From IMG/VR virus record IMGVR_UViG_3300017917_001342, positions 124,001 to 188,000 of that record: DNA of 64,000 nucleotides; one strand, given 5' to 3'. This document shows positions 6,582 to 29,036 of the stretch, piece by piece. A program made the position numbers and the translations under genes. The number at the start of each line of letters is the position of its first letter. Position 1 is the stretch's first letter. Under the pieces are notes generated by a model. It ran no database searches, was not told the origin of the DNA, and was given only the letters and a program-made list of their open reading frames with translations.

Positions 6582-6664
6582 GATACACTTGTGGGCACCC
6601 AAGCGTCTTAGTGCGGTATCTGCGGATTGAAAGGGGAGACGGTTCAAATCCGTCGAAGTGTATC
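6582..6664 (+). ncRNA. tRNA-like core on an extended stem, no CCA
   Basis: GATACACTT/AAGTGTATC closing stem; GACGG-TTCAAAT-CCGTC T arm. Confidence 0.45.
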
Positions 6665-6694
6665 TTAACAACAATTTGCAACAACAGGTGCAAC

Positions 6695-6997
6695 ATGGCA
6701 GAGTTTTGTTTTATTGGTAAAAAATGCGAAGACGCAGACAAAACTATGCTGTTTGCTGCAACTGATGACCTGCAACCAATTCTAGAAACAGACACATCTA
6801 TGGCACACTTGCTTGCACGTATTGGCAAGTTTAGCAGTGTTAAAGATGCTAAACGCAATGGCTGGGATAAACCAATCCCTAAAGGTTGGGCAGAGTTTAC
6901 TGTTGGTAAAGGTGTTAACAGAGTTGACATTTACATTTGGAACCCAACTACAACACTAGCGGAATTTGTCGAACAGGACGCTGCGACTGAGCAATAG
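6695..6997 (+). CDS. hypothetical protein, possibly S4-like RNA-binding
   Basis: LLARIGKFSSVKDAKRNGW resembles the S4-domain helix pattern; AGG RBS. Confidence 0.45.
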   Translation: MAEFCFIGKKCEDADKTMLFAATDDLQPILETDTSMAHLLARIGKFSSVKDAKRNGWDKPIPKGWAEFTVGKGVNRVDIYIWNPTTTLAEFVEQDAATEQ

Positions 6998-7117
6998 GTA
7001 ATCCTAGTAGTAGGTACAACGCTCATGCAAATAGAAGCATTGTATTTGGGTGTTGATCTATTGCTTGACAAGTTTTTTAAACTGTGCTACAACACAATTC
7101 CAATTTAAGAGGACAGT

Positions 7118-7522
7118 GTGATGCTAGAATGTTTGATCATGGGCGATAGTATTGCTGTTGGCATTGCTCAGCAACGCCCCGAATGTGTAGTTGAAGCCAA
7201 AATTGGTATCAACAGCATGGATTATGTTAATGGGTTGTACTTTTTCTATGCAGTACCAGATGCAAAGACTACCGTGATTAGTCTTGGTAGTAACGACTTT
7301 GACAATAGCGAAACTTATCCTGTGCTGTTGACACTGCGTGAAGAAATCAAGGGTAACGTGTTGTGGATTTTGCCTGCACGAAATGACGAGGCACGTAATG
7401 TTATGCTAACCATTGCTCGAGAGCGTGGTGACGCAGTTGCAGATACTCGTGCTTGGCCATTGTCACCAGACGGTGTTCATCCTACCGTAAAAGGATACAA
7501 AGGACTGGCACAGTCTTGGTAA
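7118..7522 (+). CDS. SGNH/GDSL hydrolase
   Basis: GDSIAVG, SLGSND, DGVHPTVKGY blocks. Confidence 0.85.
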   Translation: MMLECLIMGDSIAVGIAQQRPECVVEAKIGINSMDYVNGLYFFYAVPDAKTTVISLGSNDFDNSETYPVLLTLREEIKGNVLWILPARNDEARNVMLTIARERGDAVADTRAWPLSPDGVHPTVKGYKGLAQSW

Positions 7523-7530
7523 AGAATAAT

Positions 7531-7612
7531 GCTCACGTATCCCCCTCCGCTACGAACGGAGAGTCAGGTAATTGGATGGAAGATGGGGGTTCGAGTCCCT
7601 CCGTGAGTACCA
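7531..7612 (+). tRNA. atypical D-armless tRNA-Arg(ACG)
   Basis: GCTCACG/CGTGAGT, CTCCG-CTACGAA-CGGAG directly after a 7-nt linker, 23-nt variable region, T arm, ACCA. Confidence 0.7.
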
Positions 7613-7812
7613 TATAAAGGAGAATGCACTATGCATGGTTATCAATATCTATTGCCAGCATGTTTGATAGCATGGGCTGTTGCTGTTGTCACACTGTTTC
7701 AATGGCCGCCCTGTGCTAAAATGTATTGGGCAACAGATCAACGATTGAATTGTGTATTGACATCCTGGCACGGTCCTGTACTAAACAATGGTACGTGGAC
7801 CTGGTAAATTTT

Positions 7813-7902
7813 GGACGGTTGTTAGAGTGGTTGATTATACGCCCCTGGAAAGGGCGTCTGGATGAAAGTCCAGCGGGGGTTCGAATCCCTCACCGTCCGC
7901 CA
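7813..7902 (+). tRNA. tRNA-Ser(GGA)
   Basis: CGCCC-CTGGAAA-GGGCG, long variable arm. Confidence 0.92.
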
Positions 7903-7924
7903 TTGATTAGTGAAAGGGCATATT

Positions 7925-8116
7925 ATGAAAATCATTGGATTTAAGAAAGGTGCTAACTCAATTAATGCTATAAAATCAGTAAGAAACCATACAGGTATGA
8001 GTCTTGCAGAAAGCAAACGTCTTATTGAAAGTGTACTCGAAGGTAAAATGGTAACACTTGATGAAGACATTGTGCTACGTGAAGAATTAACAGATCAGCT
8101 TTTTATTGTACATTGA
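7925..8116 (+). CDS. ribosomal protein L7/L12 C-terminal-domain-like protein
   Basis: GANSINAIKSVRNHTGMSLAESKRLIES aligns with [28 protein letters not shown] of bL12. Confidence 0.7.
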   Translation: MKIIGFKKGANSINAIKSVRNHTGMSLAESKRLIESVLEGKMVTLDEDIVLREELTDQLFIVH

Positions 8117-8168
8117 TTTTGTTCTTTGAAACGGTTAGCGAAAACAGATAAAACAATTCTGTTTTCAT

Positions 8169-8252
8169 CTATACACAAGGCGTAGGCCGCGCCGATGTTA
8201 TGGAAACAGGTTGGCATCAGCCGACTAGGTGGTTCGATTCCACAGTGTATAG
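8169..8252 (+). ncRNA. tRNA-like core on an extended stem, no CCA
   Basis: CTATACAC/GTGTATAG, D-like GGCG/CGCC, GATGTT/GGCATC arm, GTGG-TTCGATT-CCAC. Confidence 0.5.
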
Positions 8253-8267
8253 TTGAAAACGGAATAT

Positions 8268-8342
8268 TGGGGATTAGCCAAGTGGTAAGGCACCGGACTT
8301 TGATTCCGGCATACGGAGGTTCGACCCCTCCATCCCCAGCCA
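8268..8342 (+). tRNA. tRNA-Gln(TTG)
   Basis: CCGGA-CTTTGAT-TCCGG. Confidence 0.93.
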
Positions 8343-8348
8343 AATACT

Positions 8349-8423
8349 GCGCCGGTAGCTCAGAGGCAGAGCAGGGAGCTCTTAACTCCAAGGTCGGGAT
8401 TTCGAAATTCCCCCGGCACACCA
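8349..8423 (+). tRNA. tRNA-Lys(CTT)
   Basis: GGAG-CTCTTAA-CTCC. Confidence 0.88.
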
Positions 8424-8428
8424 ATCTA

Positions 8429-8539
8429 GGGCTGTTACGTCAAACGGACAACACTGGGGCCTGTGTAATACCAAGACAGTAATGTCCTCTGGAGTCAGAT
8501 AACCTTGGGATATCGGTTCGATCCCGATACAGTCCACCA
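8429..8539 (+). ncRNA. 111-nt CCA-ended tRNA/tmRNA-TLD-like RNA with G3.U70
   Basis: GGGCTGT/ACAGTCC-ACCA, ATCGG-TTCGATC-CCGAT, two internal hairpins. Confidence 0.65.
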
Positions 8540-8696
8540 TTGATAAGCTGTATCTCTAGGGTTAGAGAGAACAGGGCAGAGTGGGTGAAGCGGGGTTCGA
8601 GTCCCCAAACGATGAGGTTCGACTCCAAATCGTGCAGGTGCAATAGACCGCTGTTTTGATCACTAAATATTCCTGTTAACAACAGGAGTGTTTAAC

Positions 8697-11072: not shown

Positions 11073-12017
11073 ATGGCTAGTTTACTAGACCCTGCAATAT
11101 TGTTTTTTATATTTGGTATTTTTGCGGGTTTGATTAAATCAAATCTAGCCATACCAGAACAGATTTCTAAATTTCTATCACTGTATTTGCTAATGGCATT
11201 AGGCCTTAAAGGTGGTTTTGCATTAGCTGCAAATGGCTTTACAGGCGAAATTGCATCGGTAATAGCAATAGGTTTACTATTAGCATTTGCTGTACCTATA
11301 TTAGGATATGCTGTGCTACGAACCAAATTAAATGGTTTTGACGCCGCAGCAGTTGCAGCAACTTACGGTTCAGTAAGTGCCGTCACATTTGTTACTGCAA
11401 CTCAATACTTGTCTATGGTTAACGTAGAATATGGCAGTTACATGGCAGCAGTAATGGCACTGATGGAATCACCTGCTATCATCATGGCTGTGGCATTAGC
11501 AGCGTATATCAGAGCAAGTAAGAGCGTTAGCATTAAACATGTATTGCACGAAAGCTTTACAGATGGTGCTCACATATTGCTGTTAGCAGCATTGGCTATT
11601 GGTTTTGTAACAGGTGCTAGTGGCGAAACAGTAATGAAACCATTTGTTGGTGACCTATTCAAAGGGCTGTTGGCATTCTTCCTGTTAGACATGGGACTAC
11701 AAGTTGCCAAGCGCATACCAGAACTTAGAGATAAAAGCATTGCATTGATAGTATATGCTGTTGCGTCTCCTATAGTTCATAGTATACTTGCATTAACACT
11801 GGCAGTGCTGTTTGGTGTATCTGTAGGCAACGCAATACTGTTAATGGTACTTGCTGCTAGTGCAAGTTACATTGCAGTACCAGCCGTATTAAAATTTGCC
11901 ATACCAGAAGCTAACCCTAGTGTTTACTTTGGATTGAGTTTAGGTATTACGTTCCCCTTTAACGTGCTAATAGGTATACCGTTGTATCATTGGCTAGCAT
12001 CATTAGTGATTGGATAA
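11073..12017 (+). CDS. sbtA: sodium-dependent bicarbonate transport family permease
   Basis: LLDPAILFF...SLYLLMALGLKGG, AATYGSVSAVTF, ASASYIAVPA. Confidence 0.85.
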   Translation: MASLLDPAILFFIFGIFAGLIKSNLAIPEQISKFLSLYLLMALGLKGGFALAANGFTGEIASVIAIGLLLAFAVPILGYAVLRTKLNGFDAAAVAATYGSVSAVTFVTATQYLSMVNVEYGSYMAAVMALMESPAIIMAVALAAYIRASKSVSIKHVLHESFTDGAHILLLAALAIGFVTGASGETVMKPFVGDLFKGLLAFFLLDMGLQVAKRIPELRDKSIALIVYAVASPIVHSILALTLAVLFGVSVGNAILLMVLAASASYIAVPAVLKFAIPEANPSVYFGLSLGITFPFNVLIGIPLYHWLASLVIG

Positions 12018-12020
12018 CAA

Positions 12021-12116
12021 ATGAAATACATTCTAAAATTCTTCGCTACATCGACATCGGGTGATAAGAGTTCACACAGACTCTATACTACTAGGTATGA
12101 GGATCTCTGCCAATGA
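12021..12116 (+). CDS. 31-aa ORF translationally coupled (ATGA overlap) to AOX
   Basis: MKYILKFF...YTTRYEDLCQ; stop overlaps the AOX start. Confidence 0.45.
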   Translation: MKYILKFFATSTSGDKSSHRLYTTRYEDLCQ

Positions 12117-12715
12117 CAGAGCCACAACCAAAAGACTTTAGCGATAGATTTGCTTATAGTTTAACTATGTTCTTTCGTTGGTTTGCTGATACATTTTTTG
12201 CAAAACGCTACGGACACCGTGCAGTGGTTTTAGAAACTGTTGCCGGTGTACCCGGTATGGTTGCAGGCATGTGGCAGCATCTGCGCAGTCTACGTAAAAT
12301 GGAACCAGACAAGCGTGGATGGATTCACACACTGTTAGCAGAAGCTGAAAATGAACGTATGCATTTGATGATCTTTATTGAAATTGCAAAACCAAATTGG
12401 TTTGAACGATTGATTGTAATGTTTGCACAGTTTGTGTTTTGGCATTTCTATTTTGTGCTGTATGTGTTTTTTCCAAAAACTGCACATCGCATGGTTGGAT
12501 ACTTTGAAAATCAAGCAGTTGTAAGTTATACACATTACCTGGAAGAAATTGATGCAGGTCGAGCAGAAAACATACCTGCTCCTAAAATTGCAATTGATTA
12601 CTATCACTTGCATCCCGACGCAAGGTTACGTGATGTTGTTATCGCAGTGCGATTAGATGAACAAGGTCATGCAGATGTTAATCACAGCATGGCAAATGAA
12701 TTAAGCAACGTTTGA
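12113..12715 (+). CDS. aox: alternative oxidase
   Basis: LETVAGVPGMV, EAENERMHL, ENQAVVSY, DEQGH di-iron motifs. Confidence 0.93.
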   Translation: MTEPQPKDFSDRFAYSLTMFFRWFADTFFAKRYGHRAVVLETVAGVPGMVAGMWQHLRSLRKMEPDKRGWIHTLLAEAENERMHLMIFIEIAKPNWFERLIVMFAQFVFWHFYFVLYVFFPKTAHRMVGYFENQAVVSYTHYLEEIDAGRAENIPAPKIAIDYYHLHPDARLRDVVIAVRLDEQGHADVNHSMANELSNV

Positions 12716-15732: not shown

Positions 15733-15876
15733 AAAGTTATTTATTACCTATAAACCATAGCGTTTGGACGCACAACCATTGGGTATAGTGTAGTCACTAA
15801 GTGGGGCACTTGTGCCGAACAGGGTTCGCGCCTGTTCTTTTTTTCAAAAAAACTGCATTTATTTTAAAAAATGCTG

Positions 15877-15943
15877 TTGACCATGCTGGCAAGAACAGCT
15901 ATGTTATGTGAGTAAGCAAAACAGCTTACACGCTCTTTGACAA
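15877..15943 (+). promoter_or_regulatory. sigma70 promoter + hairpin + rrn-type boxA leader (unit A)
   Basis: TTGACC-17-TATGTT; GTAAGC/GCTTAC; CGCTCTTTGACAA. Confidence 0.6.
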
Positions 15944-15949
15944 GATAGA

Positions 15950-16386
15950 AAACACAATAGACTTGGTAGTGTGAGGAACACGTAAACCCAAGTTGCGTAA
16001 CGTGTGCTGTTACTACCGCGCGGTTCGGGATACTGTAAAGTATTACTCGTATTGCTAATTGTAGCAGCACACACTAAACAGAAACTGGTAGCTATAGCAT
16101 ATTGTTAATGCGCTATGATATCAGAGGAAGACAGTGTGGCGGCTGTCCAGAGCACTAGCTCTGCAAGCACAAATCAGCTAACATGTGTACTGATACTGGA
16201 GAAACCTGTCGATTCAGGTCAATGGCTGTTTCTGTTTTTACTTGCAACCTGCCTATGTGGAATTGCGTGATAATCTGCTGCGTCAGGCCTGAAGGGACAA
16301 TTCCCGCGGCGCAATGGAAGAGCCACATTAGTCAAAACGTTGAGATTGTATCAAGATGCGAGTGGGTTGCAACTAAAAACAGAAAA
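15950..16386 (+). ncRNA. large structured ncRNA, unit A
   Basis: no credible ORF; long stems 16076-16085/16228-16237 and 16229-16249/16365-16385. Confidence 0.5.
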
Positions 16387-16390
16387 GGCA

Positions 16391-16459
16391 TTGACGTAGT
16401 AAATACGCGATGCTACATTAACTACGTAGACGGTAAACAGTTTACAGGTTCTTTGACAA
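16391..16459 (+). promoter_or_regulatory. sigma70 promoter + hairpin + boxA leader (unit B)
   Basis: TTGACG-17-TACATT; GTAAA/TTTAC; GGTTCTTTGACAA. Confidence 0.6.
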
Positions 16460-16469
16460 TTAGGGAATA

Positions 16470-16575
16470 CTAACAGTTGCGGTTGGGGCACAAGTGGTTG
16501 GCCTGAATCCATAAAACTCCTTGGGTGATGCCTGTCGGGAGCAAGCTGAGTTCGAATCTCAGACGCAACTGTTAG
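16470..16575 (+). ncRNA. tRNA-like core on a 12-bp stem, no CCA
   Basis: CTAACAGTTGCG/CGCAACTGTTAG; CTGAG-TTCGAAT-CTCAG. Confidence 0.55.
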
Positions 16576-16584
16576 TTAATAAAC

Positions 16585-16704
16585 AGCAACGCAAGTCTGT
16601 GTAATGCTAAGAGATCGGGGTTCAAATCCCCGGATTGCGGGGAAACCAGGCGAACTAGCTTAACTGGTAAAAGCGATTAGCGTAACAGGTATGCTTGCGT
16701 TGCT
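16585..16704 (+). ncRNA. circularly permuted tRNA-like module 1 (YrlA-type topology)
   Basis: long stem, then GAGAT, T arm, GAAA-capped acceptor-like stem, TAGCTT-AACTGGTA-AAAGC D arm, back into stem. Confidence 0.7.
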
Positions 16705-16712
16705 TTGATAAT

Positions 16713-16829
16713 ACAGGGTGTTGTTTGAATAACACTTGCCGGTGTCACGGGTTCGAGTCCCGTTCGGTCCATTGCGGGTCGATAGCTCAGTTGGTAGAGC
16801 ATGGTGAGAGTATCAAACATTCATCCTGT
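16713..16829 (+). ncRNA. circularly permuted tRNA-like module 2 (YrlA-type topology)
   Basis: GTGTC, ACGGG-TTCGAGT-CCCGT, TCGGTCC-ATTGC-GGGTCGA, TAGCTCAGTTGGTAGAGC. Confidence 0.75.
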
Positions 16830-17376
16830 TGTAAACGACATGGGCCCGAACTAAGTATCGGATAATAAAATAAAAAGGCCATAAGCGCAGCAGCGCAACG
16901 TCTTAAGTGACCATTTGTAGCAGCCTAGGCTACACCGAGGCACATGTTAACTAGCGCAGGGTGACGAACCCGTAAGACGCAAGAATATTGGTACTGCTAC
17001 TTGAAATGCAGCTAAGTCGCTCGAATACGAGAGTAGAGCCACACGCAGGAGGGTCCAACTGAAAGAGAAGGCGCTACCAAGTACACCATCAACTAAGTTG
17101 AATGTTTGTGCGACTTTAGGTAGAGATGCTACCCAGCAGAGTTTGCAAATCTAATGAGCTCGCACTGAAATTGGAATACGGTGTTAAAAGTTGCAATACT
17201 GATTCAAACGTATTAGTATACCCATCTTAATACGTTGGTGTTAATGGCTTGTGGGTAACGGTAACTTAACTTAGCAATAGGTTAGACGCGGAGGGACTAT
17301 CAGCGAAAGCTTGCATACCCATAGATGTGATGCCGGGCTGGCAGGGAGGAATGAGACTCCCACTTTGATAGATTTT

Positions 17377-17650: not shown

Positions 17651-18153
17651 GCCTGCTAGTCAAGAGTAGAAAAGCAATGAGACTAGTAGGTCCTTAGCGG
17701 GATAAACAAAGTAACCTGTGGCGCAGTGCTTGCGAGCATGGATGAAACGTAAGTGTTTAGACTATAACTGATATGCATCTCCTCCTTCCCCGCTAGCTAG
17801 GACGGGTTGGTTGTAGATCTGATGCTGATCGAATGGTTCGAATCCTGGGAGAGCACTGCATATCAGTTTAAATTCTGTTTTCACATGTACTATGTTCTGG
17901 GAACACTTTAACCAGGGTTAGAGTGCTGGGTTCGATTCCCGGGCGGGTTAAATGGGGGTTCGAGTCCCTCAGTAGTACAGTTGAAAGCAGAATTTGCAAT
18001 TCGGTTTCTACCTGCATTAGACAGTGTAAAGGTGCATATACTTTGGGCGAACGTAGTAAGATAGGATGAAGTACAAGTCCCGTATCTGCTAGTAGTTTTT
18101 GGACAAGGTGGGGCCAGTTCGAATCTGGCACTGATGCAGTTAGAAACAGAATT
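17651..18153 (+). ncRNA. ~500-nt structured RNA with several T-loop hairpins
   Basis: long stems at 17766/17857, 17871/17988, 17998/18141; GGTTCGA hairpins at 17926, 17954, 18113. Confidence 0.5.
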
Positions 18154-18155
18154 TT

Positions 18156-18234
18156 TGCGGGGTAGAGAAGTCTGGTCGTTCTCGCCGGGCTCATAACTCG
18201 GAGATCAGTGGTTCAAATCCACTCCCCGCAACCA
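18156..18234 (+). tRNA. tRNA-Met(CAT), initiator-like
   Basis: TGCGGGGTAGAG..., CCGGG-CTCATAA-CTCGG, AACCA. Confidence 0.85.
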
Positions 18235-18573
18235 ATATTATGAGTGTGTAACCCGCGGAGGGTTGAAGATACAAGAAGCTGTTGTATCGAGCGAGGTCAT
18301 TCTTCAGCGCAGACTCACCAATTATAACTAAATGCGGATAGCACCGCTTGCATACTGAGTAAGTATTAGCACGCCGCATATATCCCACCAGAGTGTCGGT
18401 AAACCACGGTAAGGGGAAGGTGCTTGAAGACATTGTATTACGTGTGGCAAATACTAGAGTATTACCTACTCCCACTTATCAGGGAATTACCTGCGCTGTA
18501 CATCTTAGATGATAACGGTTGCAAACACGATAAGACGTAATATAATTAAAACACTTATATAGGATATAATCCA

Positions 18574-19281: not shown

Positions 19282-19356
19282 TCCCTAGTAGCTCAGGGGC
19301 AGAGCAGCTGACTGTTAATCAGCGGGTCGGTGGTTCGAAACCATCCTGGGGAGCCA
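19282..19356 (+). tRNA. tRNA-Asn(GTT)
   Basis: GCTGA-CTGTTAA-TCAGC. Confidence 0.93.
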
Positions 19357-19729: not shown

Positions 19730-20971
19730 GTGATAATGGATCAATTTTTTCAAAAAACTGTAGGTAGCAATTTTGCATGCGGCTATAAATGGGCATGGAG
19801 TACCATACGGTTACAGACTAGAACAACAAATAGTTGTCATAGAACCGATCAAGACATTATCACACCAGAAACATTTGATTCATTTCATAACACACCAATT
19901 AAATTGCAAACTCGCAAAGCCATGTTAAATGGACAATGGCCGGGTCACGGTTGCGAGTACTGTAAACACATAGAAGATTCTGGTGGCATCAGTGATCGCA
20001 TGTATGCTAATGAACATATACACAACGCTTACATACCTCATGAACTAATAACTAATCCAAAATCGTTAAAAACTACACCCACTATGGTTGAGGTGTATTT
20101 TAGTAATCTTTGCAATATGAGTTGCATTTACTGTAATGAATCATTTAGCACAGTTTGGGAACAAGAAAAACTCAAACACAACGAGCCGATTGCATCTAAT
20201 TTACTGTCGATTAGTTCTGTCGATTACAAAAAAATGACAGACGCATTTTTTACTTGGTTAGATAAAAATATCTATTCGATATTTGAGCTAAACATTTTGG
20301 GCGGCGAACCATTCTTTCAACCAGAACTTGATAGAATGTTAGCATTTATAGAAACGCACCCAAATCCAGATCTAACACTTAAAATATTTTCTAACTTAAA
20401 AGTTCCTACACAAAAGTTTTCTACTATTCTACGTAAATTAGATAGTTTTATCGAATGTAATATAGTCAAACAAGTTGAAATAATAACCAGTATAGACTGT
20501 TGGGGGCCGGAACAAGAATACATACGTACAGGAATTTCTCTTCGTCAATGGGAAGAGAATTTTTCGTACATGGTAAAAAATCATCAAAATATTAACATAC
20601 GAACCCACGGTACCATCACCTGTCTTACCATTAAGACTATATATGGCTTAATTGAAAAAATTAACTTTTACAATAGTTTCAGATCTAACTCTGAGATAAT
20701 TTATTCGTCCGATTTGCTAGTAGAACCAGAGTTCTTACAGTCGGGTATATTCCCATCGGGTTTTTTCGACGATGATTTTGCTGCTATTTTACAAATAGTA
20801 CAAGAAGATTATACAAAAGAGAAAATAACCAATCATTGGTTATCTGTAAACAATCATCAGTATAAACCAGAACTTATTTCAAAACTAAAAGCATTTTTAA
20901 CAACACTTGATATCAGACGCAACACCAACTGGAAATCTACATTTAAATGGCTAGATGAGTTTCAAGTGTAA
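19730..20971 (+). CDS. radical SAM protein (twitch/SPASM-type N-terminus), paralog 1
   Basis: NLCNMSCIYC, GGEPFF, N-terminal C..KW / SCH / CEYC. Confidence 0.88.
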   Translation: MIMDQFFQKTVGSNFACGYKWAWSTIRLQTRTTNSCHRTDQDIITPETFDSFHNTPIKLQTRKAMLNGQWPGHGCEYCKHIEDSGGISDRMYANEHIHNAYIPHELITNPKSLKTTPTMVEVYFSNLCNMSCIYCNESFSTVWEQEKLKHNEPIASNLLSISSVDYKKMTDAFFTWLDKNIYSIFELNILGGEPFFQPELDRMLAFIETHPNPDLTLKIFSNLKVPTQKFSTILRKLDSFIECNIVKQVEIITSIDCWGPEQEYIRTGISLRQWEENFSYMVKNHQNINIRTHGTITCLTIKTIYGLIEKINFYNSFRSNSEIIYSSDLLVEPEFLQSGIFPSGFFDDDFAAILQIVQEDYTKEKITNHWLSVNNHQYKPELISKLKAFLTTLDIRRNTNWKSTFKWLDEFQV

Positions 20972-20973
20972 AC

Positions 20974-22209
20974 ATGGAAAATATGTTTGAAAAATTAACA
21001 GGTTATCGTGCCGGATGTGCAGCTAAATGGAATTGGAGCACAGTTTTTTTAAACCAAGGCACAACTGCTAGCTGCCACAGAACCGATACTGATACTGTAG
21101 ATCATATATCTATACACAATTTTCATAATACCCCGCTAAAGTTGAAAACACGTCAACTGATGCAGCAAGGACAATGGCCAGGGCATGGGTGTGAGTATTG
21201 TAAACATATAGAAAACTCCGGTGGTATCAGCGACAGAATGAATTCAAATTCTCTGTTTAATGGCAAAAAGATTCCGCACGAATTGCTTGTTAATACAGAT
21301 GCAATACACACAACGCCCACGGTACTAGAAATAAATTTTACCAATTTATGTAACATGAGTTGTATATATTGCAGCGAAGGATGGAGTTCTGTATGGGAAC
21401 AGGAAAATATCAAATTCAATGATCGCATTGAACAAGCCCCTAGACTATTAAAAGGCGCAGAGTACGAAAGAATCCTGTTTGAATTCTTTCAATGGTTAGA
21501 CACAAACGTCGAACATTTGTCAGACCTACACATATTAGGTGGGGAACCATTTATTATGCCAGAATTTGACAAAACCGTCGAGTTTCTAAAAACACGCAAG
21601 TTGCCAGATTTGAATTTGGTAGTAATTACCAATTTGAAAATAACCAGAGACAAGCTAACTCAACACCTGTCGGTATTGAATTCGCTATTAGACAACAATG
21701 CCATTGGATCTGTAAGAATAGTTGCTAGTTTAGATTGTTGGGGACCGGAACAAGAGTATATACGTACTGGATTGTCCTTGCAGCAATGGGAAGACAACTT
21801 TGCATTTATAGTAAAAAACTATCGTAACATAGACATCAATGTACACAGTACAATCACAGGTCTTTCTATAAAGACCACCGACAGTTTAATAGACAAAATC
21901 AACTATTACAGGACATTGCTAGATAACAATAAAAACATTATTCATTCTAAGAATTTTGTTACAGGCTTTAGTTACTTGAGTCCAAAAATTTACCCTTATG
22001 GTTTTTTTGATAGCGATTTTGAAAAAATATTGACCAAAATAACTGATAGTTATGAGCTAGAAGAAATGAAAGGCTATAAATTATCAATTGATAACGAGCC
22101 ATATAACCCAGCTCTAATAGAAGATTTAAAACGATATCTAGATAAATTGGATTTTAGAAGAAACACAAATTGGCGTAACTATTTTTCATGGTTAGACGAG
22201 TTTAATTAA
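20974..22209 (+). CDS. radical SAM protein, paralog 2
   Basis: NLCNMSCIYC, GGEPF. Confidence 0.88.
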   Translation: MENMFEKLTGYRAGCAAKWNWSTVFLNQGTTASCHRTDTDTVDHISIHNFHNTPLKLKTRQLMQQGQWPGHGCEYCKHIENSGGISDRMNSNSLFNGKKIPHELLVNTDAIHTTPTVLEINFTNLCNMSCIYCSEGWSSVWEQENIKFNDRIEQAPRLLKGAEYERILFEFFQWLDTNVEHLSDLHILGGEPFIMPEFDKTVEFLKTRKLPDLNLVVITNLKITRDKLTQHLSVLNSLLDNNAIGSVRIVASLDCWGPEQEYIRTGLSLQQWEDNFAFIVKNYRNIDINVHSTITGLSIKTTDSLIDKINYYRTLLDNNKNIIHSKNFVTGFSYLSPKIYPYGFFDSDFEKILTKITDSYELEEMKGYKLSIDNEPYNPALIEDLKRYLDKLDFRRNTNWRNYFSWLDEFN

Positions 22210-22210
22210 A

Positions 22211-23461
22211 ATGGAAGATCAGTTTTCAAAACTCACCAATGGAAAATTTGGATGTGGTTACAAATGGGCATGGAGCACAATTTTTTTACAGCAAGGGTCT
22301 AGCTCTAGTTGTCATCGTACTATGCAGGACTTTTTTGATGAACAAACTGTGCAACAGTTTCATAACTCTCCATTGAAGCTGCAAAGTCGTAAAGCCATGT
22401 TAGATGGTCAATGGCCGGGGCATGGTTGTGAATACTGCAAAAATATAGAGGCTGCTGGCGGTATTAGTGATAGACAACAAATAAACAAAAAATTTCAAGG
22501 TCTTATTGTACCTAAAGAACTGTTAACTGATTCTACTGCAATCAATGTATCGCCTACTATGATTGAATTGCATTTTAGTAATTTGTGTAATATGAGTTGC
22601 ATATATTGTAACCAACGATTCAGTTCGGTATGGGAACAAGAAAATTTAAAGCACGGCAACATATTTGCAGATACCGAATTTCTATTAAATCACAGTGCAA
22701 CCGGTCGTATGATAGATTCATTTTTTGATTGGCTGCACTACAATATAGGCAATTTAGTTAAAATTAACATACTTGGTGGTGAACCATTTTATCAATCTGA
22801 GTTTTATAGATTTATAGATTTCTTAGCCGAGCATCCAAATCCAAATTTAGACATTACTGTGTTTTCTAATTTAAAAGTTAATGAAAATAAATTTTCATCG
22901 GCATTGAAACGATTAGAAACTTTTGTAAAATCCAACATTGTCAAAAGTGTAGAAATAGTTGCTAGTTTAGATTGTTGGGGACCTGAACAAGAATACGTTA
23001 GAACTGGGCTGTCTTTACAACAATGGGAAGATAATTTTGCACTGTTGGTAAACAATTTTCAAGATATTGAAGTACAAATTCATGGCACAATATCAAGTTT
23101 GACTATTAAAACTATCCCAGATCTACTCAACAAGATTAATTTTTACAATAGTATGCGTAGTAAACACCCAATAAGTTACTCTAATAACATACTAGTGCAT
23201 CCAAATTGCTTACAACCTGGTATATTTCCTTTGGGGTTTTTTGATGATGATTTCAACAAAATACTGCCTCTTATACAAAATCAAGCAGAACACGATGAAA
23301 TGCAAGGCTATTTCAAAACCATTAACAATACAGACTACAATCCTCAATTGATAATTGAATTGAAACAATACCTAGACACGTTGGATATCAGACGACACAC
23401 AAATTGGAAAACAGTGTTTCCATGGTTAGATCAGTTCGATGTTGACAAACATCACAGTTAG
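22211..23461 (+). CDS. radical SAM protein, paralog 3
   Basis: NLCNMSCIYC, GGEPFY. Confidence 0.88.
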   Translation: MEDQFSKLTNGKFGCGYKWAWSTIFLQQGSSSSCHRTMQDFFDEQTVQQFHNSPLKLQSRKAMLDGQWPGHGCEYCKNIEAAGGISDRQQINKKFQGLIVPKELLTDSTAINVSPTMIELHFSNLCNMSCIYCNQRFSSVWEQENLKHGNIFADTEFLLNHSATGRMIDSFFDWLHYNIGNLVKINILGGEPFYQSEFYRFIDFLAEHPNPNLDITVFSNLKVNENKFSSALKRLETFVKSNIVKSVEIVASLDCWGPEQEYVRTGLSLQQWEDNFALLVNNFQDIEVQIHGTISSLTIKTIPDLLNKINFYNSMRSKHPISYSNNILVHPNCLQPGIFPLGFFDDDFNKILPLIQNQAEHDEMQGYFKTINNTDYNPQLIIELKQYLDTLDIRRHTNWKTVFPWLDQFDVDKHHS

Positions 23462-24586: not shown

Positions 24587-24919
24587 ATGACATCATTCAC
24601 TTGTAGAACATGCGGCATAGAAGGTGAAGAAAACTTCTATAAAACTGCAAAGTATCAATGCAAGAAGTGCTGGAATCAGCGCACTTACAAAACAGGCATT
24701 GACAAGATCAATAAACTTAAATCTGAACTAGGCGGATGCTGTGCGCGATGCGGTTACGATAAGTATCTAGGCGCACTTGAGTTCCACCATTTGGATCCCA
24801 CAGTAAAAGAATTTGCACTAGGACACAAGAGGGGGCTGTCTGAAGAAGCACTTCGAAAAGAGATTAACAAGTGCATCCTACTGTGTGCGAACTGTCATAG
24901 AGAAGAACATCAAGTCTAA
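24587..24919 (+). mobile_element. HNH endonuclease inserted in a tRNA-Arg gene
   Basis: CARCGY..ALEFHH..LLCANCHREEH; stop codon lies in the TCTAA anticodon loop of the orphan 3' tRNA half. Confidence 0.8.
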
Positions 24920-24957
24920 GCAGTGGGTCGCAGGTTCGAGTCCTGCAGGGACCGCCA
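24915..24957 (+). pseudogene. 3' half of the disrupted tRNA-Arg(TCT)
   Basis: TCTAA-GCAGT-GGGTC-GCAGGTTCGAGTCCTGC-AGGGACC-GCCA. Confidence 0.75.
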
Positions 24958-26309: not shown

Positions 26310-26317
26310 TAAACTAG

Positions 26318-26763: not shown

Positions 26764-26836
26764 AGGCAAAAATAAATTGCAAAATTATCGAATATTCTGC
26801 GTATGAATATCATAATTAGGCATAAATTAACTTAGT

Positions 26837-26912
26837 GCTGTCATAGCTCAGCTGGTAGAGCATCTGATTTGTAATCAGAGGGTCGGGAGTTCAAGTCTCT
26901 CTGGCAGCACCA
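26837..26912 (+). tRNA. tRNA-Thr(TGT)
   Basis: TCTGA-TTTGTAA-TCAGA. Confidence 0.93.
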
Positions 26913-26923
26913 TTCAATACAAT

Positions 26924-26998
26924 GTCGCGTTAGCAAAACGTTAATGCGCTGCCCCGCAAAGGTAGAGGACTGTGGTTAAATTCCCAGACGCGACTCCA
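26924..26998 (+). tRNA. tRNA-Cys(GCA), divergent
   Basis: GTCGCGT/ACGCGAC-TCCA, CTGCC-CCGCAAA-GGTAG; D loop lacks GG. Confidence 0.7.
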
Positions 26999-27005
26999 AT
27001 TCAAT

Positions 27006-27089
27006 GCGACTGTGGTGGAATGGTAGACACGCTAGCTTGAGGTGCTAGTGGCGCAAGCCGTGGAAGTTCGAATCTTCTCAGTCGCACCA
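27006..27089 (+). tRNA. tRNA-Leu(GAG)
   Basis: CTAGC-TTGAGGT-GCTAG. Confidence 0.93.
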
Positions 27090-27129
27090 AATATTTCTCA
27101 ATAGTAGTTTTTTCACAGTAAATATCTTT

Positions 27130-28251
27130 ATGGAAAACACTGATAAAGATTTTTATTGTGCAGCACCGTTTGTGAATAGATCGTACGATCCAAACGGTAA
27201 AGTTAAACCTTGTTGCGAATGGCACAACTTAGATACAACTGTCGACGATGAACAACAGTTGATTTCTCTACGATCTCAATTTTTACAAAACAAACCAAAT
27301 CCCTGTTGTAAAGTCTGTCATAAAACAGAAGCTGCTGGGGTACAATCTACTAGAAATGATTTTAACAACAGGTACGGTAGACCAACTGTACCTGTGCTGC
27401 GTCATTTGGATCTAAGTCTAGGCAATCTATGTAATTTCAAATGTAGAATGTGCAGCAGTTTTTTTAGCACAAAATGGGCCAGTGACGAACAAGCATTGGG
27501 ATTGATTCCACACAAGTTGTACAGACGTACCTGGGATGAATTGAAACATTTAGACATATCAAATGTAGATATGATCAAGTTCAAAGGTGGCGAGCCTTTT
27601 CTAGAACAAGAAACAATGATCAATACCCTAACTGCAATCTTATCTCAAAAAGGCTCGTTAGAAAATATTACAGTTGTTGTAAACACAAATGGATCTATAG
27701 AAATAGAACCAAGATTGATAGAGTTGTTGTCTCTTTGCAAAACTGTTAACTTAACAGTTAGTATAGATGGATACGGTAAAGTAAACGAATATCAACGCAC
27801 AGGCGCAGTATGGAATGTAATAGAAAAAAATCTATTAGATTTTCAAAAAAATCTCAACAATAACTTTGACTTATCTATATGGTCTGTGTGGACTATACTC
27901 AACATTACTAACTTAAAAACACTGTTAGGCTGGGTTACAACCAACTTGCCTAGATACAAAATCTATGGTACTACGCTGCATTTTCCAGAAGAGTTTGCTA
28001 TACGCAATATACCAGACCAACTAAAAACGCAATTTTTTAATGACATTAGCAATTGGTGTGAACTCGATCACAACGACGGTGTGCTAGAAAACAAATTACA
28101 GATTTTAAATGAGTTACAACAACAGCCTATAAAAACGATCAACGAAGTTAAATCTTACATAGATAGCCTTGACAAAGTTAGAAATGAGTCGTTTTCTTTA
28201 ATAGATCCTGTGATGTATGCGGCATTTTTTGAATCAACTGTTGACATATGA
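27130..28251 (+). CDS. radical SAM protein with twitch/SPASM domain
   Basis: CAAPF..PCC, NLCNFKCRMC, GGEPF. Confidence 0.88.
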   Translation: MENTDKDFYCAAPFVNRSYDPNGKVKPCCEWHNLDTTVDDEQQLISLRSQFLQNKPNPCCKVCHKTEAAGVQSTRNDFNNRYGRPTVPVLRHLDLSLGNLCNFKCRMCSSFFSTKWASDEQALGLIPHKLYRRTWDELKHLDISNVDMIKFKGGEPFLEQETMINTLTAILSQKGSLENITVVVNTNGSIEIEPRLIELLSLCKTVNLTVSIDGYGKVNEYQRTGAVWNVIEKNLLDFQKNLNNNFDLSIWSVWTILNITNLKTLLGWVTTNLPRYKIYGTTLHFPEEFAIRNIPDQLKTQFFNDISNWCELDHNDGVLENKLQILNELQQQPIKTINEVKSYIDSLDKVRNESFSLIDPVMYAAFFESTVDI

Positions 28252-28306
28252 TATAAGACCTATTATCTTCTACGCTAATCATTGACAACCCTTGTGAGGT
28301 GACATT

Positions 28307-28693
28307 ATGGCTAGCAAAACTGATATGCTTATTGCTAAAGCACTTAGCACCGATAGCGAAGATGAAGCTATTGCATGCCTTAAAATGGCACGTAAACAAG
28401 GTGCATCTCATACCGCAGTTTCTACTAACAAGTCAACTCAAGACTGGGAAGCACTTGCACGCAAGTATCATAAAATTGCCTATGAAAATCAAGAAGACCT
28501 TAAACGTACCAAAGCTGCATTGAAATCACTGATGGTTTCAAAAACCATACATGCTGCGTACAGCAGTCTACAAGAAAACGATGCTGCTAAACTGCGTAAA
28601 CAGTTGTCGGCAGCAAAGAATGAAACTTACAAATGGAAAATGGTAAGTTTTGGTATACTGTGTTTTTGTACTTTTTTAATGTTTTTGATTTAA
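28307..28693 (+). CDS. coiled-coil protein with C-terminal TM helix
   Basis: GAGG RBS; EAIACLKMARK N-terminus. Confidence 0.65.
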   Translation: MASKTDMLIAKALSTDSEDEAIACLKMARKQGASHTAVSTNKSTQDWEALARKYHKIAYENQEDLKRTKAALKSLMVSKTIHAAYSSLQENDAAKLRKQLSAAKNETYKWKMVSFGILCFCTFLMFLI

Positions 28694-28798
28694 TTTACTG
28701 TTGACAACGTTCAAGTAACACACTATATTAACAACATGAAGCAGCACAAATTGAGTTGAAAAACAAAAAAGTGCTGCTTCAAAAAAAATAAAAAACAG

Positions 28799-28868
28799 TT
28801 GACACGCTGTACGTAAGGTGTTAAAGTAACTGAGTAAACAACAAAACGGTTTACATGCTCTTTAAAAA
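28799..28868 (+). promoter_or_regulatory. sigma70 promoter + hairpin + boxA leader (unit C)
   Basis: TTGACA-17-TAAAGT; GTAAAC/GTTTAC; TGCTCTTTAAAAA. Confidence 0.65.
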
Positions 28869-28914
28869 TTTACATGTGGTCCTAGCGCAAGCGATAATGG
28901 ACAAGAAGCGAAAG

Positions 28915-29036
28915 TTTCTGTTTACACATATTGTAACTGCTTTAGGTAATAGCATTTCGGTAATGCGCACTTGCTTAATCGAGTGAGATACGGTTCGAGT
29001 CCGCACCAAGCAAATTACAATAGCTGTAAACAGAAA
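28915..29036 (+). ncRNA. tRNA-like cloverleaf at the tip of a long helix
   Basis: TTTCTGTTTACA/TGTAAACAGAAA; GCATT-TCGGT-AATGC; CACTTG/CGAGTG; CGG-TTCGAGT-CCG. Confidence 0.6.

What the first reader, a model, noticed from the sequence alone, without database searches (positions are those of the whole stretch)
6582..29036. tRNA-shaped cores mounted on long helices without CCA (6582-6664, 8169-8252, 16470-16575, 28915-29036)
Each has a canonical T arm (GGTTC(G/A)A..CC) and D-like/anticodon-like arms. The acceptor continues as an 8-25-bp helix with no NCCA end, and the anticodon loop is irregular. They could display a tRNA elbow while being unchargeable, as decoys would (inference).
Basis: partly seen in the sequence, partly recalled or inferred. 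Interest (0 to 1): 0.62.

Follow-up and report, generated by a model that had tools for sequence, protein, structure and literature searches.

The report
Phage tRNA-like RNAs in rRNA-style leaders
The four odd "tRNA-shaped" objects are real members of an uncatalogued RNA family in large freshwater phages: a small tRNA-derived core clamped by a long conserved helix, placed behind a promoter and a boxA signal exactly as 16S rRNA sits in a bacterial rRNA operon, and usually directly in front of the phage's tRNA genes.

Summary
All four loci have a T arm (E4's has one A·C mismatch), a closing helix and no CCA. None is called as tRNA or matches any Rfam 15 family.

They are not isolated. The window holds at least seven such elements plus two sub-threshold YrlA-like RNAs. 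It is part of a 518-kb phage genome with 55 tRNAs.

Pattern and covariance-model searches found about 40 distinct relatives in about 30 IMG/VR viral contigs. Their shared anatomy is:
- a 12-bp sequence-conserved outer helix;
- a 2x2 internal loop;
- a 7-9-bp covarying inner helix;
- a variable core with 0-3 T arms.

E2 and E4 carry this handle. E3's core recurs in the canonical handle elsewhere. E1 is a diverged relative with an orthologue. T loops are conserved and T stems covary in every orthologue group.

The context was unexpected. It runs sigma70-like promoter, hairpin, rrn-type boxA, the helix-clamped core, then a tRNA 1-6 nt downstream. That is the plan of an rRNA operon's 16S module.

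I read the elements as leader cassettes of Nus-antiterminated phage tRNA operons, with the long helix acting as a leader-trailer or RNase III-type stalk. The decoy idea is untested. This is a new variant of known kinds; interest is moderately high.

The parts
6570..6676 (+). E1: diverged member. It has a roughly 19-bp closing helix and a core with T arm 6638-6654. A boxC-like TGTGGGCAC follows the 5' helix strand directly.
   Evidence: Sequence and fold. Orthologue L034:4549-4664 is 85% identical and is followed by a tRNA at 4671. Model R1 does not hit it.
8121..8148 (+). Degenerate boxA-like GTTCTTTGAAACGG, followed by a solo GAAAACAGA copy of the 3' handle strand, upstream of E2.
   Evidence: Read. 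The orthologue in L032 has a clean TTGACA-17-TATATT promoter and GTTCTTTGAAAATTAGG.
8156..8265 (+). E2: canonical handle (12-bp P1, internal loop, 7-8-bp P2) around a core of a D-like hairpin, two hairpins and a T arm. tRNA-Gln starts 2 nt after it.
   Evidence: R1 gives 69 bits, though E2 is in the seed. Fold z = -3.65. Orthologues are L032, L046 and L020a. Downstream tRNA.
15877..15948 (+). Promoter-like site (TTGACC-17-TATGTT) and boxA GCTCTTTGACAAGATAG, heading the unit that contains F2.
   Evidence: A terminator-like hairpin lies just upstream at 15817-15837.
16229..16385 (+). F2: family member without a T loop. It overlaps a probably spurious ORF at 16183-16473.
   Evidence: R1 gives 39.4 bits, E 1.6e-8, and F2 is not in the seed. 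Its upstream flank is orthologous to that of L044.
16391..16464 (+). Promoter-like site (TTGACG-17-TACATT with TG) and boxA GTTCTTTGACAATTAGG, heading E3.
16466..16580 (+). E3: tRNA-like core (D arm with GG, rod-like arm, T arm) in a private 13-bp helix.
   Evidence: The core is 88% identical to L035 and L039, where it sits in the canonical handle and is followed by tRNA-Gln. An RNA-library contig spans 16440-16600 with no differences.
16586..16822 (+). Two YrlA-like RNAs (16586-16706 and 16722-16822) directly after E3. Their arms run T arm, hairpin, D arm.
   Evidence: Rfam YrlA scores 27.6 and 44.8 bits, below the gathering score of 69. An RNA-library contig spans 16627-16939.
17872..17993 (+). 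E5: canonical handle with two T arms (17926-17942 and 17954-17970).
   Evidence: R1 gives 88.6 bits. Sequence. It is absent from a strain variant seen in an RNA-library contig.
17999..18152 (+). E6: member in tandem with E5, with T arm 18113-18129. tRNA-Met starts 3 nt after it.
   Evidence: R1 gives 41.9 bits, E 3.5e-9, and E6 is not in the seed. Orthologues L030:10214-10370 and L037 show three compensatory T-stem changes.
28701..28902 (+). Head of the E4 unit. It holds tandem promoter-like sites (28701-28729 and 28799-28827), boxA GCTCTTTAAAAATTTAC (28857-28873) and a small conserved hairpin (28878-28902).
   Evidence: This boxA matches the published consensus GYTCTTTAANA exactly.
28915..29036 (+). 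E4: canonical handle variant (TTTCTGTTTACA.../...TGTAAACAGAAA) with an extra inner helix and a T arm that has one mismatch. GOLLD follows 425 nt downstream.
   Evidence: R1 gives 63.6 bits, though E4 is in the seed. Fold z = -4.8. GOLLD.

Best explanation
The objects are leader cistrons of phage tRNA (and GOLLD) transcription units that are built on the plan of a bacterial rRNA operon.

Shown here:
- Each typical unit has, in order: a sigma70-type promoter; a hairpin; a boxA motif; often a second small hairpin; a solo copy of AAACAGAA; then the element.
- The boxA motif is GCTCTTTGA(A/C)AATTTAG, near-identical to E. coli rrn boxA.
- The element is a leader-trailer-type helix of about 22 bp. 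It has a 12-bp conserved P1, a 2x2 loop CA/G(C/U) and a 7-9-bp covarying P2.
- The helix closes a compact, variable, tRNA-derived core. The core's T arm usually stacks on P2 as a T arm stacks on an acceptor stem.
- A tRNA gene often starts 1-6 nt after the helix.

Inferred:
- Host RNA polymerase transcribes the unit. NusB/NusE load on boxA and make the complex resistant to Rho over the long untranslated array, as in rrn operons.
- The 5' strand, held near the polymerase, pairs with the 3' strand once the short core is made.
- The two-turn helix with a central loop is cut by host RNase III. RNase P cuts at the first tRNA.
- The product is a stable, end-protected small RNA with a tRNA elbow but no CCA. 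The leader carrying boxA may remain attached to it.
- The helix-capped core would thus serve as a processing and stabilising module at the head of the operon. Any further activity of the released core, such as binding tRNA-recognising proteins, would be additional.
For: Family and structure:
- Two pattern scans of IMG/VR returned 19 and 29 stretches.
- This gave 37-43 distinct elements, all on the tRNA strand.
- RNAalifold recovers exactly P1 + 2x2 loop + P2, and 13 of 20 pairs show double compensatory changes.
- P2 positions 3-9 pair in 0.89 of cases, against 0.55 +/- 0.03 when strands are swapped between elements.
- Model R1 finds the non-seed members E6 and F2 at E about 1e-8. The forward strand outscores the reverse by 35-50 bits.

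Context:
- 32 of 43 elements have a boxA-like 15-mer within 260 nt upstream. Chance is about 0.003 per element.
- 15 of 43 have a tRNA starting 1-6 nt downstream.
- Promoters of the form TTGACA-N17-TATAAT lie about 30-45 nt before boxA.

Comparison with the rRNA operon:
- The E. coli rrnH leader reads ...CACTGCTCTTTAACAATTTATCAGACAATCTGTGTGGGCAC... and its trailer is complementary.
- The published layout is boxB-boxA-boxC, with boxC in the 5' strand of a leader-trailer helix that needs more than 17 bp.
- The published boxA consensus is GYTCTTTAANA.
- E1 and its orthologue carry (C)TGTGTGGGCAC, the core of boxC.

Other support:
- The phage has no RNase III or NusB of its own, so host factors would be used.
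- Contigs from two RNA libraries cover E3, the YrlA-like pair and E6, but not the neighbouring ORFs at 13.3-14.7 kb, which DNA runs cover evenly.
Against: - No cleavage site, transcript end or Nus binding was observed. The RNA evidence is a few low-depth contigs from libraries that may contain DNA.
- The handle sequence was not found next to boxA in any of about 185,000 species-representative bacterial genomes. The one hit was a chance match in coding DNA. It is therefore not a simple copy of a known host rrn leader.
- 11 of 43 members lack a detectable boxA within 260 nt. E1 in this window is followed by an ORF, not a tRNA.
- The model does not explain why the core so often keeps T arms (25 of 37 members, up to three per element).
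- It also does not explain why P1 is conserved in sequence rather than only in pairing.
- A continuous helix is a poor RNase P context. The role of the competing upstream AAACAGAA copy is unexplained.
Confidence: 0.6

Rival explanations
1. tRNA-elbow decoys. The released cores display a T-loop/D-loop elbow on a rigid helix. They titrate host proteins that recognise tRNA shape, such as defence nucleases, modification enzymes or RNase P, without being chargeable.
For: T loops are conserved and T stems covary in all orthologue groups. 25 of 37 members keep at least one strict T loop and some keep two or three. There is no CCA and no anticodon loop. The phage invests heavily in translation parts: 55 tRNAs, a tmRNA and two CCA-adding-type enzymes.
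Against: The cores lack anticodon stem-loops, which are the target of the known anticodon nucleases. 12 of 37 members have no T loop at all, yet keep the handle and context. The most conserved part is the handle, not the tRNA-like core. No defence or counter-defence gene co-occurs with the elements.
Confidence: 0.15
2. Y-RNA-like RNAs. The long helix is a protein-binding stem and the tRNA-like module is a tether. This would parallel bacterial YrlA and Yrn1 with Ro60/Rsr, using a host Rsr or an unknown phage protein.
For: Two sub-threshold YrlA matches lie directly after E3. A canonical-handle member, L034:2750-2866, gets a full-length YrlA match of 32 bits at E 0.004. L020b has the YrlA arm order. 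The literature describes Yrn1 with the opposite arm order, as in E1-E4, and reports YrlA in phages. A sequence-conserved helix with a conserved internal loop looks like a protein site.
Against: There is no TROVE/Rsr and no RtcB gene in the 518-kb genome. The GNCGAAN0-1G Rsr motif is absent from the handle. No match reaches the Rfam gathering score of 69 bits. No protein family co-occurs in the flanks.
Confidence: 0.1
3. Precursors of functional tRNA-like adaptors. When the upstream AAACAGAA pairs with the 5' strand of P1, P2 plus the T arm becomes a pre-tRNA-like minihelix. RNase P would cut at the internal loop, the 3' trailer would be trimmed, and a phage CCA-adding enzyme would add CCA.
For: In 18 of 25 members with a T loop, the loop lies 11-15 nt from the internal loop, against 12 in tRNA. 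19 of 37 members have the competing AAACAGAA copy 0-9 nt upstream. The phage has two CCA-adding-type genes. M. smegmatis YrlA is cut by RNase P and receives CCA.
Against: The distance is not fixed at 12. There is no anticodon loop and no known identity element. The closed form is the one supported by covariation.
Confidence: 0.1
4. Decaying tRNA pseudogenes, or a MITE-like mobile DNA whose terminal inverted repeats merely look like a helix.
For: Presence varies between close relatives: the syntenic 20 kb of L009 has none of E1-E6. Strain variants lack or swap elements at handle borders. The outer helix is a sequence-conserved inverted repeat.
Against: The inner helix varies in sequence but stays complementary, with 33 distinct 8-mers. 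DNA terminal repeats do not require that. Strand and position relative to promoter, boxA and tRNA are fixed. T stems covary. No target-site duplication is present and no transposase co-occurs.
Confidence: 0.05

Closest known systems
16S module of a bacterial rRNA operon: promoters P1/P2, boxB-boxA-boxC leader, leader-trailer helix, spacer tRNA (E. coli rrn; PMC10250234, PMC5725501)
   Same: The order of parts is the same: sigma70 promoter (tandem before E4), hairpin, boxA, 5' helix strand, structured RNA, 3' helix strand, tRNA. The boxA sequence matches: CACTGCTCTTT(G/A)A(A/C)AATTTA against E. coli CACTGCTCTTTAACAATTTA. Both have a TCTGT...CAC stretch at the start of the 5' strand, and E1 carries the boxC core. 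The helix exceeds 17 bp.
   Different: The enclosed RNA is a 60-110-nt tRNA-like core, not 16S rRNA. The tRNA follows after 1-6 nt rather than about 70. The handle has its own conserved sequence and a 2x2 loop. The units are in phage genomes and occur in tandem. Nus binding and RNase III cutting are not shown.
Bacterial Y RNAs: YrlA (Rfam RF02553) and D. radiodurans Yrn1 (PMC4201824)
   Same: Both are small RNAs whose 5' and 3' ends form a long stem carrying a tRNA-like module with T and D arms and no CCA. Both arm orders occur, as in YrlA versus Yrn1. Sub-threshold YrlA matches lie in the window and in one canonical-handle member.
   Different: There is no Rsr/TROVE gene in the genome. The stem lacks the Rsr-binding GNCGAAN0-1G motif. 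Scores are below the gathering threshold. The context is a boxA leader and tRNA genes rather than an rsr/rtcBA locus.
Phage T7 early-region RNase III processing signals (from my own knowledge, not checked here)
   Same: Both are phage-encoded two-turn hairpin stalks with a conserved central internal loop, placed between cistrons of a polycistronic transcript made by host polymerase.
   Different: T7 signals are simple hairpins between mRNAs. Here the stalk closes a tRNA-like multi-helix core and sits in a non-coding tRNA operon. Cleavage is untested.
tRNA (Rfam RF00005)
   Same: Shared features are a T arm with loop TTCRANY stacked on a helix, D-like loops with GG in some cores, and the same strand and arrays as real tRNA genes.
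   Different: There is no 7-nt anticodon loop and no discriminator-CCA. The acceptor-like helix continues for 20 bp. Neither ARAGORN nor the tRNA model calls them.
mascRNA / MALAT1 tRNA-like element with leader-trailer pairing (PMC8457004, title and abstract only)
   Same: A tRNA-like fold embedded in a longer transcript acts as a processing signal, and flanking sequences pair.
   Different: It is eukaryotic, serves RNase P/Z-dependent 3'-end formation of a long non-coding RNA, and has no boxA or operon context.

Membership tests
tRNA (RF00005) | Cloverleaf scoring above threshold with ARAGORN or the Rfam model | tested here: not met
   None of E1-E6 is called by ARAGORN. None is matched by RF00005 even at E<=10.
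tRNA (RF00005) | 7-bp acceptor stem ending in a discriminator plus CCA, encoded as in the neighbouring tRNAs | tested here: not met
   The helix runs on for 13-21 bp and no CCA follows. The regular tRNAs in the window do encode CCA.
tRNA (RF00005) | T arm: 5-bp stem with 7-nt loop TTCRANY | tested here: met
   Present in E1, E3, E5 (twice) and E6. E2 has a 4-bp stem. E4 has one A.C mismatch. It is conserved with covarying stems in orthologues.
YrlA / bacterial Y RNA (RF02553) | Score at or above the Rfam gathering threshold (69 bits) | tested here: not met
   There is no match on E1-E6. The neighbours 16586-16706 and 16722-16822 score 27.6 and 44.8 bits. L034:2750-2866 scores 32 bits.
YrlA / bacterial Y RNA (RF02553) | Gene for Ro60/Rsr (TROVE domain) nearby or in the genome | tested here: not met
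   There is no TROVE match in the 518-kb genome, while the controls responded. There is no RtcB either. The host genome is unknown.
YrlA / bacterial Y RNA (RF02553) | Rsr-binding GNCGAAN0-1G motif in the 5' strand of the stem (PMC4201824) | tested here: not met
   The handle consensus ATTCTGTTTTCACATGCA lacks it. A GGCGAA(C/A)G occurs inside the E6-group core only and is not kept in L030.
rrn-type antitermination leader with leader-trailer helix | boxA matching the consensus (GYTCTTTAANA in gamma-proteobacteria; E. coli TGCTCTTTAACAA) | tested here: met
   E4's boxA GCTCTTTAAAA matches exactly. Most others differ at one position (GCTCTTTGAAA or GCTCTTTGACA). 32 of 43 elements have it within 260 nt upstream.
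rrn-type antitermination leader with leader-trailer helix | Promoter, then boxB-type hairpin, then boxA, then the 5' strand of a helix of more than 17 bp that closes the structural RNA | tested here: met
   Promoter-like sites lie at 15877, 16391, 28701 and 28799, and in most loci. The helix is P1 12 bp + P2 7-9 bp with covariation. The layout was compared with E. coli rrnH and with PMC10250234.
rrn-type antitermination leader with leader-trailer helix | boxC (UCUGUGUGGG) within the 5' strand of the helix | tested here: inconclusive
   The canonical handle shares only TCTGT...CAC. E1 and L034 carry (C)TGTGTGGGCAC just inside the helix.
rrn-type antitermination leader with leader-trailer helix | NusB-NusE binding, Rho resistance and RNase III cleavage of the helix | not testable with these tools
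   These need biochemistry or end-mapping. The phage has no NusB or RNase III of its own.
rrn-type antitermination leader with leader-trailer helix | The enclosed RNA is ribosomal RNA | tested here: not met
   The core is 60-110 nt, is tRNA-like and has no rRNA match.

The most novel reading that the evidence does not exclude
Large freshwater phages carry miniature mimics of a pre-16S rRNA. The units would load the host's ribosomal antitermination machinery at boxA. They would then release stable helix-capped RNAs that still carry boxA and/or a tRNA elbow. These RNAs would act in trans, sponging NusB/S10, RNase III or tRNA-shape-reading proteins. The effect would be to divert host rRNA/tRNA transcription and processing capacity, or tRNA-directed defences, to the phage's own translation parts.
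Probability: 0.15. Interest if true: 0.85.

Novelty: new variant of a known kind. Interest (0 to 1): 0.68.

Why it matters
Huge phages carry tens of tRNA genes and large RNAs such as GOLLD. How these long untranslated arrays are transcribed and processed is largely unknown.

The elements give a concrete, testable answer. The arrays appear to be organised into units headed by host-type promoters and rrn-type boxA signals. Each unit begins with a helix-clamped tRNA-like RNA in the place of 16S rRNA.

The finding has three further consequences:
- It adds an uncatalogued structured RNA family, about 40 members so far with strong covariation, to the short list of phage non-coding RNAs.
- It links that family structurally to bacterial Y RNAs.
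- It places GOLLD (window 29462-29918) inside such a unit, which offers a handle on GOLLD expression.

For annotation, it explains 'orphan' T arms in phage tRNA arrays and flags overlapping ORF calls, such as 16183-16473, as probably spurious.

Tried and rejected
- Rfam at gathering score and at E<=10 gave no family on E1-E6.
- Megablast of 6000-30000 against GenBank phages found only tRNA-sized hits. A distant blastn of a full unit (L043:3885-4068) found no match.
- The search for related loci with ORF 28307-28693 found no relative. With ORF 7118-7522 it gave L009, a syntenic relative at about 80% identity. L009 lacks E1-E6 in 20 kb.
- An exact 25-mer of E3 in IMG/VR found nothing.
- I looked for a protein family that co-occurs with the elements in the flanks. 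There is none: the most shared ORF is in 10 loci and overlaps RNA genes.
- A genome-contig scan for boxA plus the handle found one chance match in coding DNA of a Desulfocapsaceae MAG, with no Rfam RNA there. The handle is therefore not a copy of a known species-representative rrn leader, and the host stays unknown.
- I first took the GCTCTTTGAAAAT motif for a -35 region. I rejected that because a full TTGACA-N17-TATAAT promoter lies 30-45 nt upstream, the motif matches boxA, and an RNA-library contig includes it.
- I tested whether the internal loop sits at a fixed tRNA-like 12 nt from the T loop. It sits at 11-15 nt in 18 of 25 members, so it is close but not fixed.
- I rejected the MITE / target-duplication reading. 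The upstream AAACAGAA copies the 3' strand rather than flanking it, and the inner helix covaries.
- Alignment A2 from the model search mixes both strands because the handle is palindromic. I did not use it for pair counts.
- One row of alignment A3 (L014) was given with wrong coordinates and should be ignored.
- The R1 hit at genome 232832-233002(-) lies in probable coding DNA with no T loop or boxA. I did not count it as a member.

Full report
**Setting.** The window is bases 124001-188000 of a 518,643-bp IMG/VR virus record with direct terminal repeats. The window holds 46 tRNA genes, all on the + strand. It also holds a GOLLD RNA (29462-29918) and a skipping-rope RNA. The whole genome has 55 tRNAs and a permuted tmRNA. 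Near-identical DNA occurs in pond and freshwater metagenomes of 13 studies.

**The observation.** The four loci are as described.
- E1 (6582-6664), E2 (8169-8252) and E3 (16470-16575) have a T arm of tRNA type. E4 (28915-29036) has loop TTCGAGT on a stem with one A.C mismatch.
- Each is closed by a helix of its 5' and 3' ends with no CCA behind it, although the ordinary tRNAs here encode CCA.
- None has a 7-nt anticodon loop. None is called by ARAGORN or by any Rfam 15 model, even at E<=10.
- Folding z-scores are -3.7, -4.1 and -4.8 for E2-E4, and -1.4 for the inner part of E1.

**Chance.**
- The T-arm motif (G[TG]TC[AG]ANNC flanked by a 4-5-bp stem) occurs 54 times on the + strand of the window and 3 times, weakly, on the - strand.
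- Outside the tRNA region, the rest of the genome gives about five weak matches on both strands together.
- Twelve + strand T arms in the window lie outside called tRNAs. A thirteenth, at 49-65, belongs to a tRNA-Ser cut by the window's edge.
It includes E5 (17872-17993, two T arms inside one helix), E6 (17999-18152) and two RNAs at 16586-16706 and 16722-16822. Those two match the Y-RNA-like family YrlA below threshold: 27.6 and 44.8 bits against a gathering score of 69.

**A conserved family.** E2 and E5 share the flanks ATTCTGTTTTCA...TGAAA(A/G)C(G/A)GAAT.
- A scan of IMG/VR for the 5' flank plus a T loop gave 19 stretches. At least six were clear relatives.
- A scan for both flanks gave 29 stretches.
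- With relaxed local scanning this yields 37-43 distinct elements in about 30 viral contigs.

All share the same anatomy:
- an outer helix P1 of 11-12 bp with conserved sequence, (A)TTCTGTTTTCA / TGAAAACAGAA(T);
- a 2x2 internal loop, CA opposite G(C/T);
- an inner helix P2 of 7-9 bp that starts TGCA.../...TGCA and then varies;
- a core of about 60-110 nt that differs between elements.

The structure is well supported:
- RNAalifold on 29 of them predicts exactly P1, the loop and P2. Thirteen of 20 pairs show changes on both sides that keep the pair.
- P2 positions 3-9 pair in 0.89 of cases. When 5' and 3' strands are swapped among elements the figure is 0.55 +/- 0.03, with a maximum of 0.63 in 2000 permutations. 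My selection required the first five P2 pairs. Positions 6-8 were free and still pair in 37, 34 and 30 of 37 cases, with four pair types.
- A covariance model (R1) finds E6 at 41.9 bits and a further element, F2 (16229-16385), at 39.4 bits. Neither is in the seed.
- R1 also finds one element just 5' of the window, at genome 122211-122359.
- The handle is nearly palindromic, yet the forward strand outscores the reverse by 35-50 bits everywhere.

**The four candidates within the family.**
- E2 and E4 carry the handle directly.
- E3 has a private 13-bp helix. Its core is 88% identical to the cores of L035 and L039, which sit in the canonical handle.
- E1 has a diverged helix (TTGTTTTTATGATACAC.../...GTGTATCTTAACAACAA). 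It has an orthologue, L034:4549-4664, at 85% identity, followed 6 nt later by a tRNA.

In every orthologue group the T loop is kept and the T stem changes by compensation:
- E2: GTGG/CCAC becomes GCGG/CCGC.
- E3: CTGAG/CTCAG becomes CTAGG/CCTAG.
- E6: GCCAG/CTGGC becomes GTTGG/CCAAC.

Across the family:
- 25 of 37 members have at least one strict T loop, and four of those have two or three.
- In 18 of the 25, the last T loop lies 11-15 nt from the internal loop. The T arm therefore stacks on P2 much as it stacks on an acceptor stem.
- Some cores (L020b, L034a) have the arm order T arm, hairpin, D arm, as in YrlA. One of them gets a weak full-length YrlA match of 32 bits at E 0.004.

**Context.**
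- All elements lie on the tRNA strand.
- In 15 of 43 a tRNA starts 1-6 nt after the 3' strand. Tandem copies occur (E5/E6, L020a/b, L042).
- In 32 of 43 a motif GCTCTTTGA(A/C)AATTT, allowing up to 3 mismatches, lies within 260 nt upstream, mostly 33-128 nt. Chance is about 0.003 per element.
- Some 30-45 nt before that motif lies a TTGACA-N17-TATAAT-type promoter, with a hairpin between the two.
- In the window, promoter-like sites lie at 15877-15905, 16391-16419 and, in tandem, 28701-28729 and 28799-28827.
- After the motif there is often a small covarying hairpin (GTCTTAG...GATAATAGAC).
- In 19 of 37 elements a solo copy of AAACAGAA follows, 0-9 nt before the handle, most often 4 nt. It could pair with the 5' strand of P1 instead of the 3' strand.

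**Comparison with the rRNA operon.** The motif is boxA.
- The E. coli rrnB boxA is given in a paper's primer as cactgctctttaacaatttatcag.
- The gamma-proteobacterial consensus is GYTCTTTAANA. E4's copy, GCTCTTTAAAA, matches it exactly.
- The E. coli rrnH region reads TTGACT-17-TAATAT, then 40 nt, then TGCTCTTTAACAATTTATCAGACAATCTGTGTGGGCACTCG. After 16S comes the complementary CAGTGCTCACACAGATTGTCTGAT, and then tRNA-Ile.
- It aligns with the phage leaders through boxA and again at TCTGT...CAC.
- The published layout is promoter, boxB, boxA, then boxC inside the 5' strand of a leader-trailer helix. That helix must exceed 17 bp. RNase III processes it. It is thought to form while boxA holds the leader at the polymerase.
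- The phage units have this layout with a small tRNA-like core in the place of 16S rRNA.
- E1 and its orthologue even carry (C)TGTGTGGGCAC, the core of boxC.
- E4's unit continues into GOLLD 425 nt downstream.

**Expression.** All laid runs are contigs, so ends and strand cannot be read. In two freshwater RNA libraries:
- contigs lie on 16440-16600 (E3 with its boxA, no differences), on 16627-16939 (the YrlA-like pair) and on 17946-18272 (E6 and tRNA-Met);
- none lies on the ORFs at 13.3-14.7 kb, which DNA runs cover evenly.

This is modest evidence that the non-coding units are transcribed and abundant.

DNA and RNA contigs of strain variants lack E5 or replace the stretch between F2 and E6, with borders at handles. 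The syntenic 20 kb of the relative L009 has none of E1-E6. Turnover is therefore fast, probably by recombination between handles.

**Mechanism.** The anatomy, the covariation, the context and the boxA identity are shown here. The following steps are inferred:
- Host polymerase starts at the promoters.
- NusB/NusE and partners load at boxA and protect the long untranslated array from Rho. The phage has no NusB or RNase III gene of its own.
- The handle forms as a leader-trailer helix around the quickly folding core.
- RNase III cuts the two-turn stalk, and RNase P cuts at the first tRNA.
- The helix-capped RNA that results is stable, and the boxA leader may remain attached to it.

I give this 0.6 overall. 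The structural and contextual part is near certain. The enzymology is perhaps even odds.

The model does not explain three things: why T arms are so often kept, why P1 is conserved in sequence, and what the competing AAACAGAA copy does. These leave room for the rivals:
- decoys of tRNA-shape readers (0.15);
- Y-RNA-like protein tethers (0.10; no Rsr or RtcB gene);
- precursors matured by RNase P and a phage CCA-adding enzyme (0.10; two such genes);
- pseudogenes or mobile DNA (0.05).

**Known families.**
- The elements are not tRNAs, because they lack the cloverleaf score, the anticodon loop and CCA.
- They are not members of YrlA, because the score is below threshold, there is no Rsr and the binding motif is absent.
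- They work most like the 16S module of an rrn operon and resemble Y RNAs in shape.
- They are in neither Rfam 15 nor GenBank phage records. Six literature searches found no description.
- The handle next to boxA was not found in species-representative bacterial genomes, apart from one chance hit.
- I class the family as a new variant of known kinds.

**Limits.**
- The host is unknown.
- No transcript ends were seen.
- The family census rests on pattern-anchored searches, which favour canonical handles.
- E1's membership rests on architecture, one orthologue and the boxC-like motif, not on the model.

Noticed in passing
window 1180-1340: A tRNA-like gene of about 160 nt with an acceptor stem, a 3-bp D stem, an odd anticodon loop (AGGUGAG), an ~83-nt variable region, a T arm and an encoded ACCA. 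It is 80% conserved in the relative L009.
   Followed up: partly
window 8429-8539: A 111-nt tRNA-like gene with a 7-bp acceptor stem (GGGCTGT/ACAGTCC), a T arm and ACCA, but a long irregular middle. Neither ARAGORN nor Rfam calls it. Another orphan T arm lies at 8592-8606, with a relative in L052.
   Followed up: partly
window 24587-24955: An HNH-like ORF (24587-24919) is followed at once by the 3' half of a tRNA (T arm, acceptor strand, CCA). This could be a remnant of a homing-endonuclease insertion or a split tRNA.
   Followed up: no
window 5519-5593: A tRNA with anticodon CUA, which ARAGORN labels 'Pyl'. It is an amber-suppressor-type tRNA, which raises the question of whether TAG is read through late in infection.
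   Followed up: no
window 29462-29918: The GOLLD RNA (234 bits) has tRNA-Arg(TCT) embedded at 29527-29600. It lies 425 nt downstream of E4, so it sits in the unit headed by the tandem promoters and boxA at 28701-28873.
   Followed up: partly
window 39057-39173; L033:2726-2843: A skipping-rope RNA lies in the window and also in another contig that carries the family. Several non-coding RNA families therefore travel together in these phage tRNA regions.
   Followed up: no
window 19730-23461: Three tandem paralogous radical-SAM-like ORFs of about 412 aa each sit in a 34.5% GC island inside the tRNA region. A fourth lies at 27130-28251.
   Followed up: no
window 11073-12715 and 37580-63998: Host-like metabolic genes are present: an SbtA-like bicarbonate transporter, alternative oxidase/PTOX, TerC, SAM synthetase, UvdE, NadM-NUDIX, NAMPT and a ClpB-like ATPase.
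   Followed up: no
genome 307125-307493(-) and 398809-399171(+); 311343-311751(-): The genome has two CCA-adding-type nucleotidyltransferase genes and a permuted tmRNA. It has no RNase III, NusB, TROVE or RtcB genes.
   Followed up: partly
L009:15850-15980: In the relative, tRNA-Asn(GTT) carries a 55-nt insertion inside the anticodon. The insertion itself contains a T-arm-like hairpin and a copy of the acceptor 3' strand. The window's tRNA-Asn (19282-19356) is intact.
   Followed up: no
window 16183-16473: This 96-aa ORF overlaps F2, a promoter-like site and a boxA. It is probably not a gene.
   Followed up: partly
window 28878-28902 and loci L014, L029, L036, L042, L043, L053: A small conserved hairpin lies between boxA and the handle. 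It has a covarying outer stem, an internal loop TAG / GAT(A/G)AT and a short capped stem. Its function is unknown and it has no Rfam match.
   Followed up: partly
genome 232832-233002 (-): A handle-like helix (34.9 bits with R1) lies far from the tRNA region. It has no T loop or boxA and sits in probable coding DNA.
   Followed up: partly
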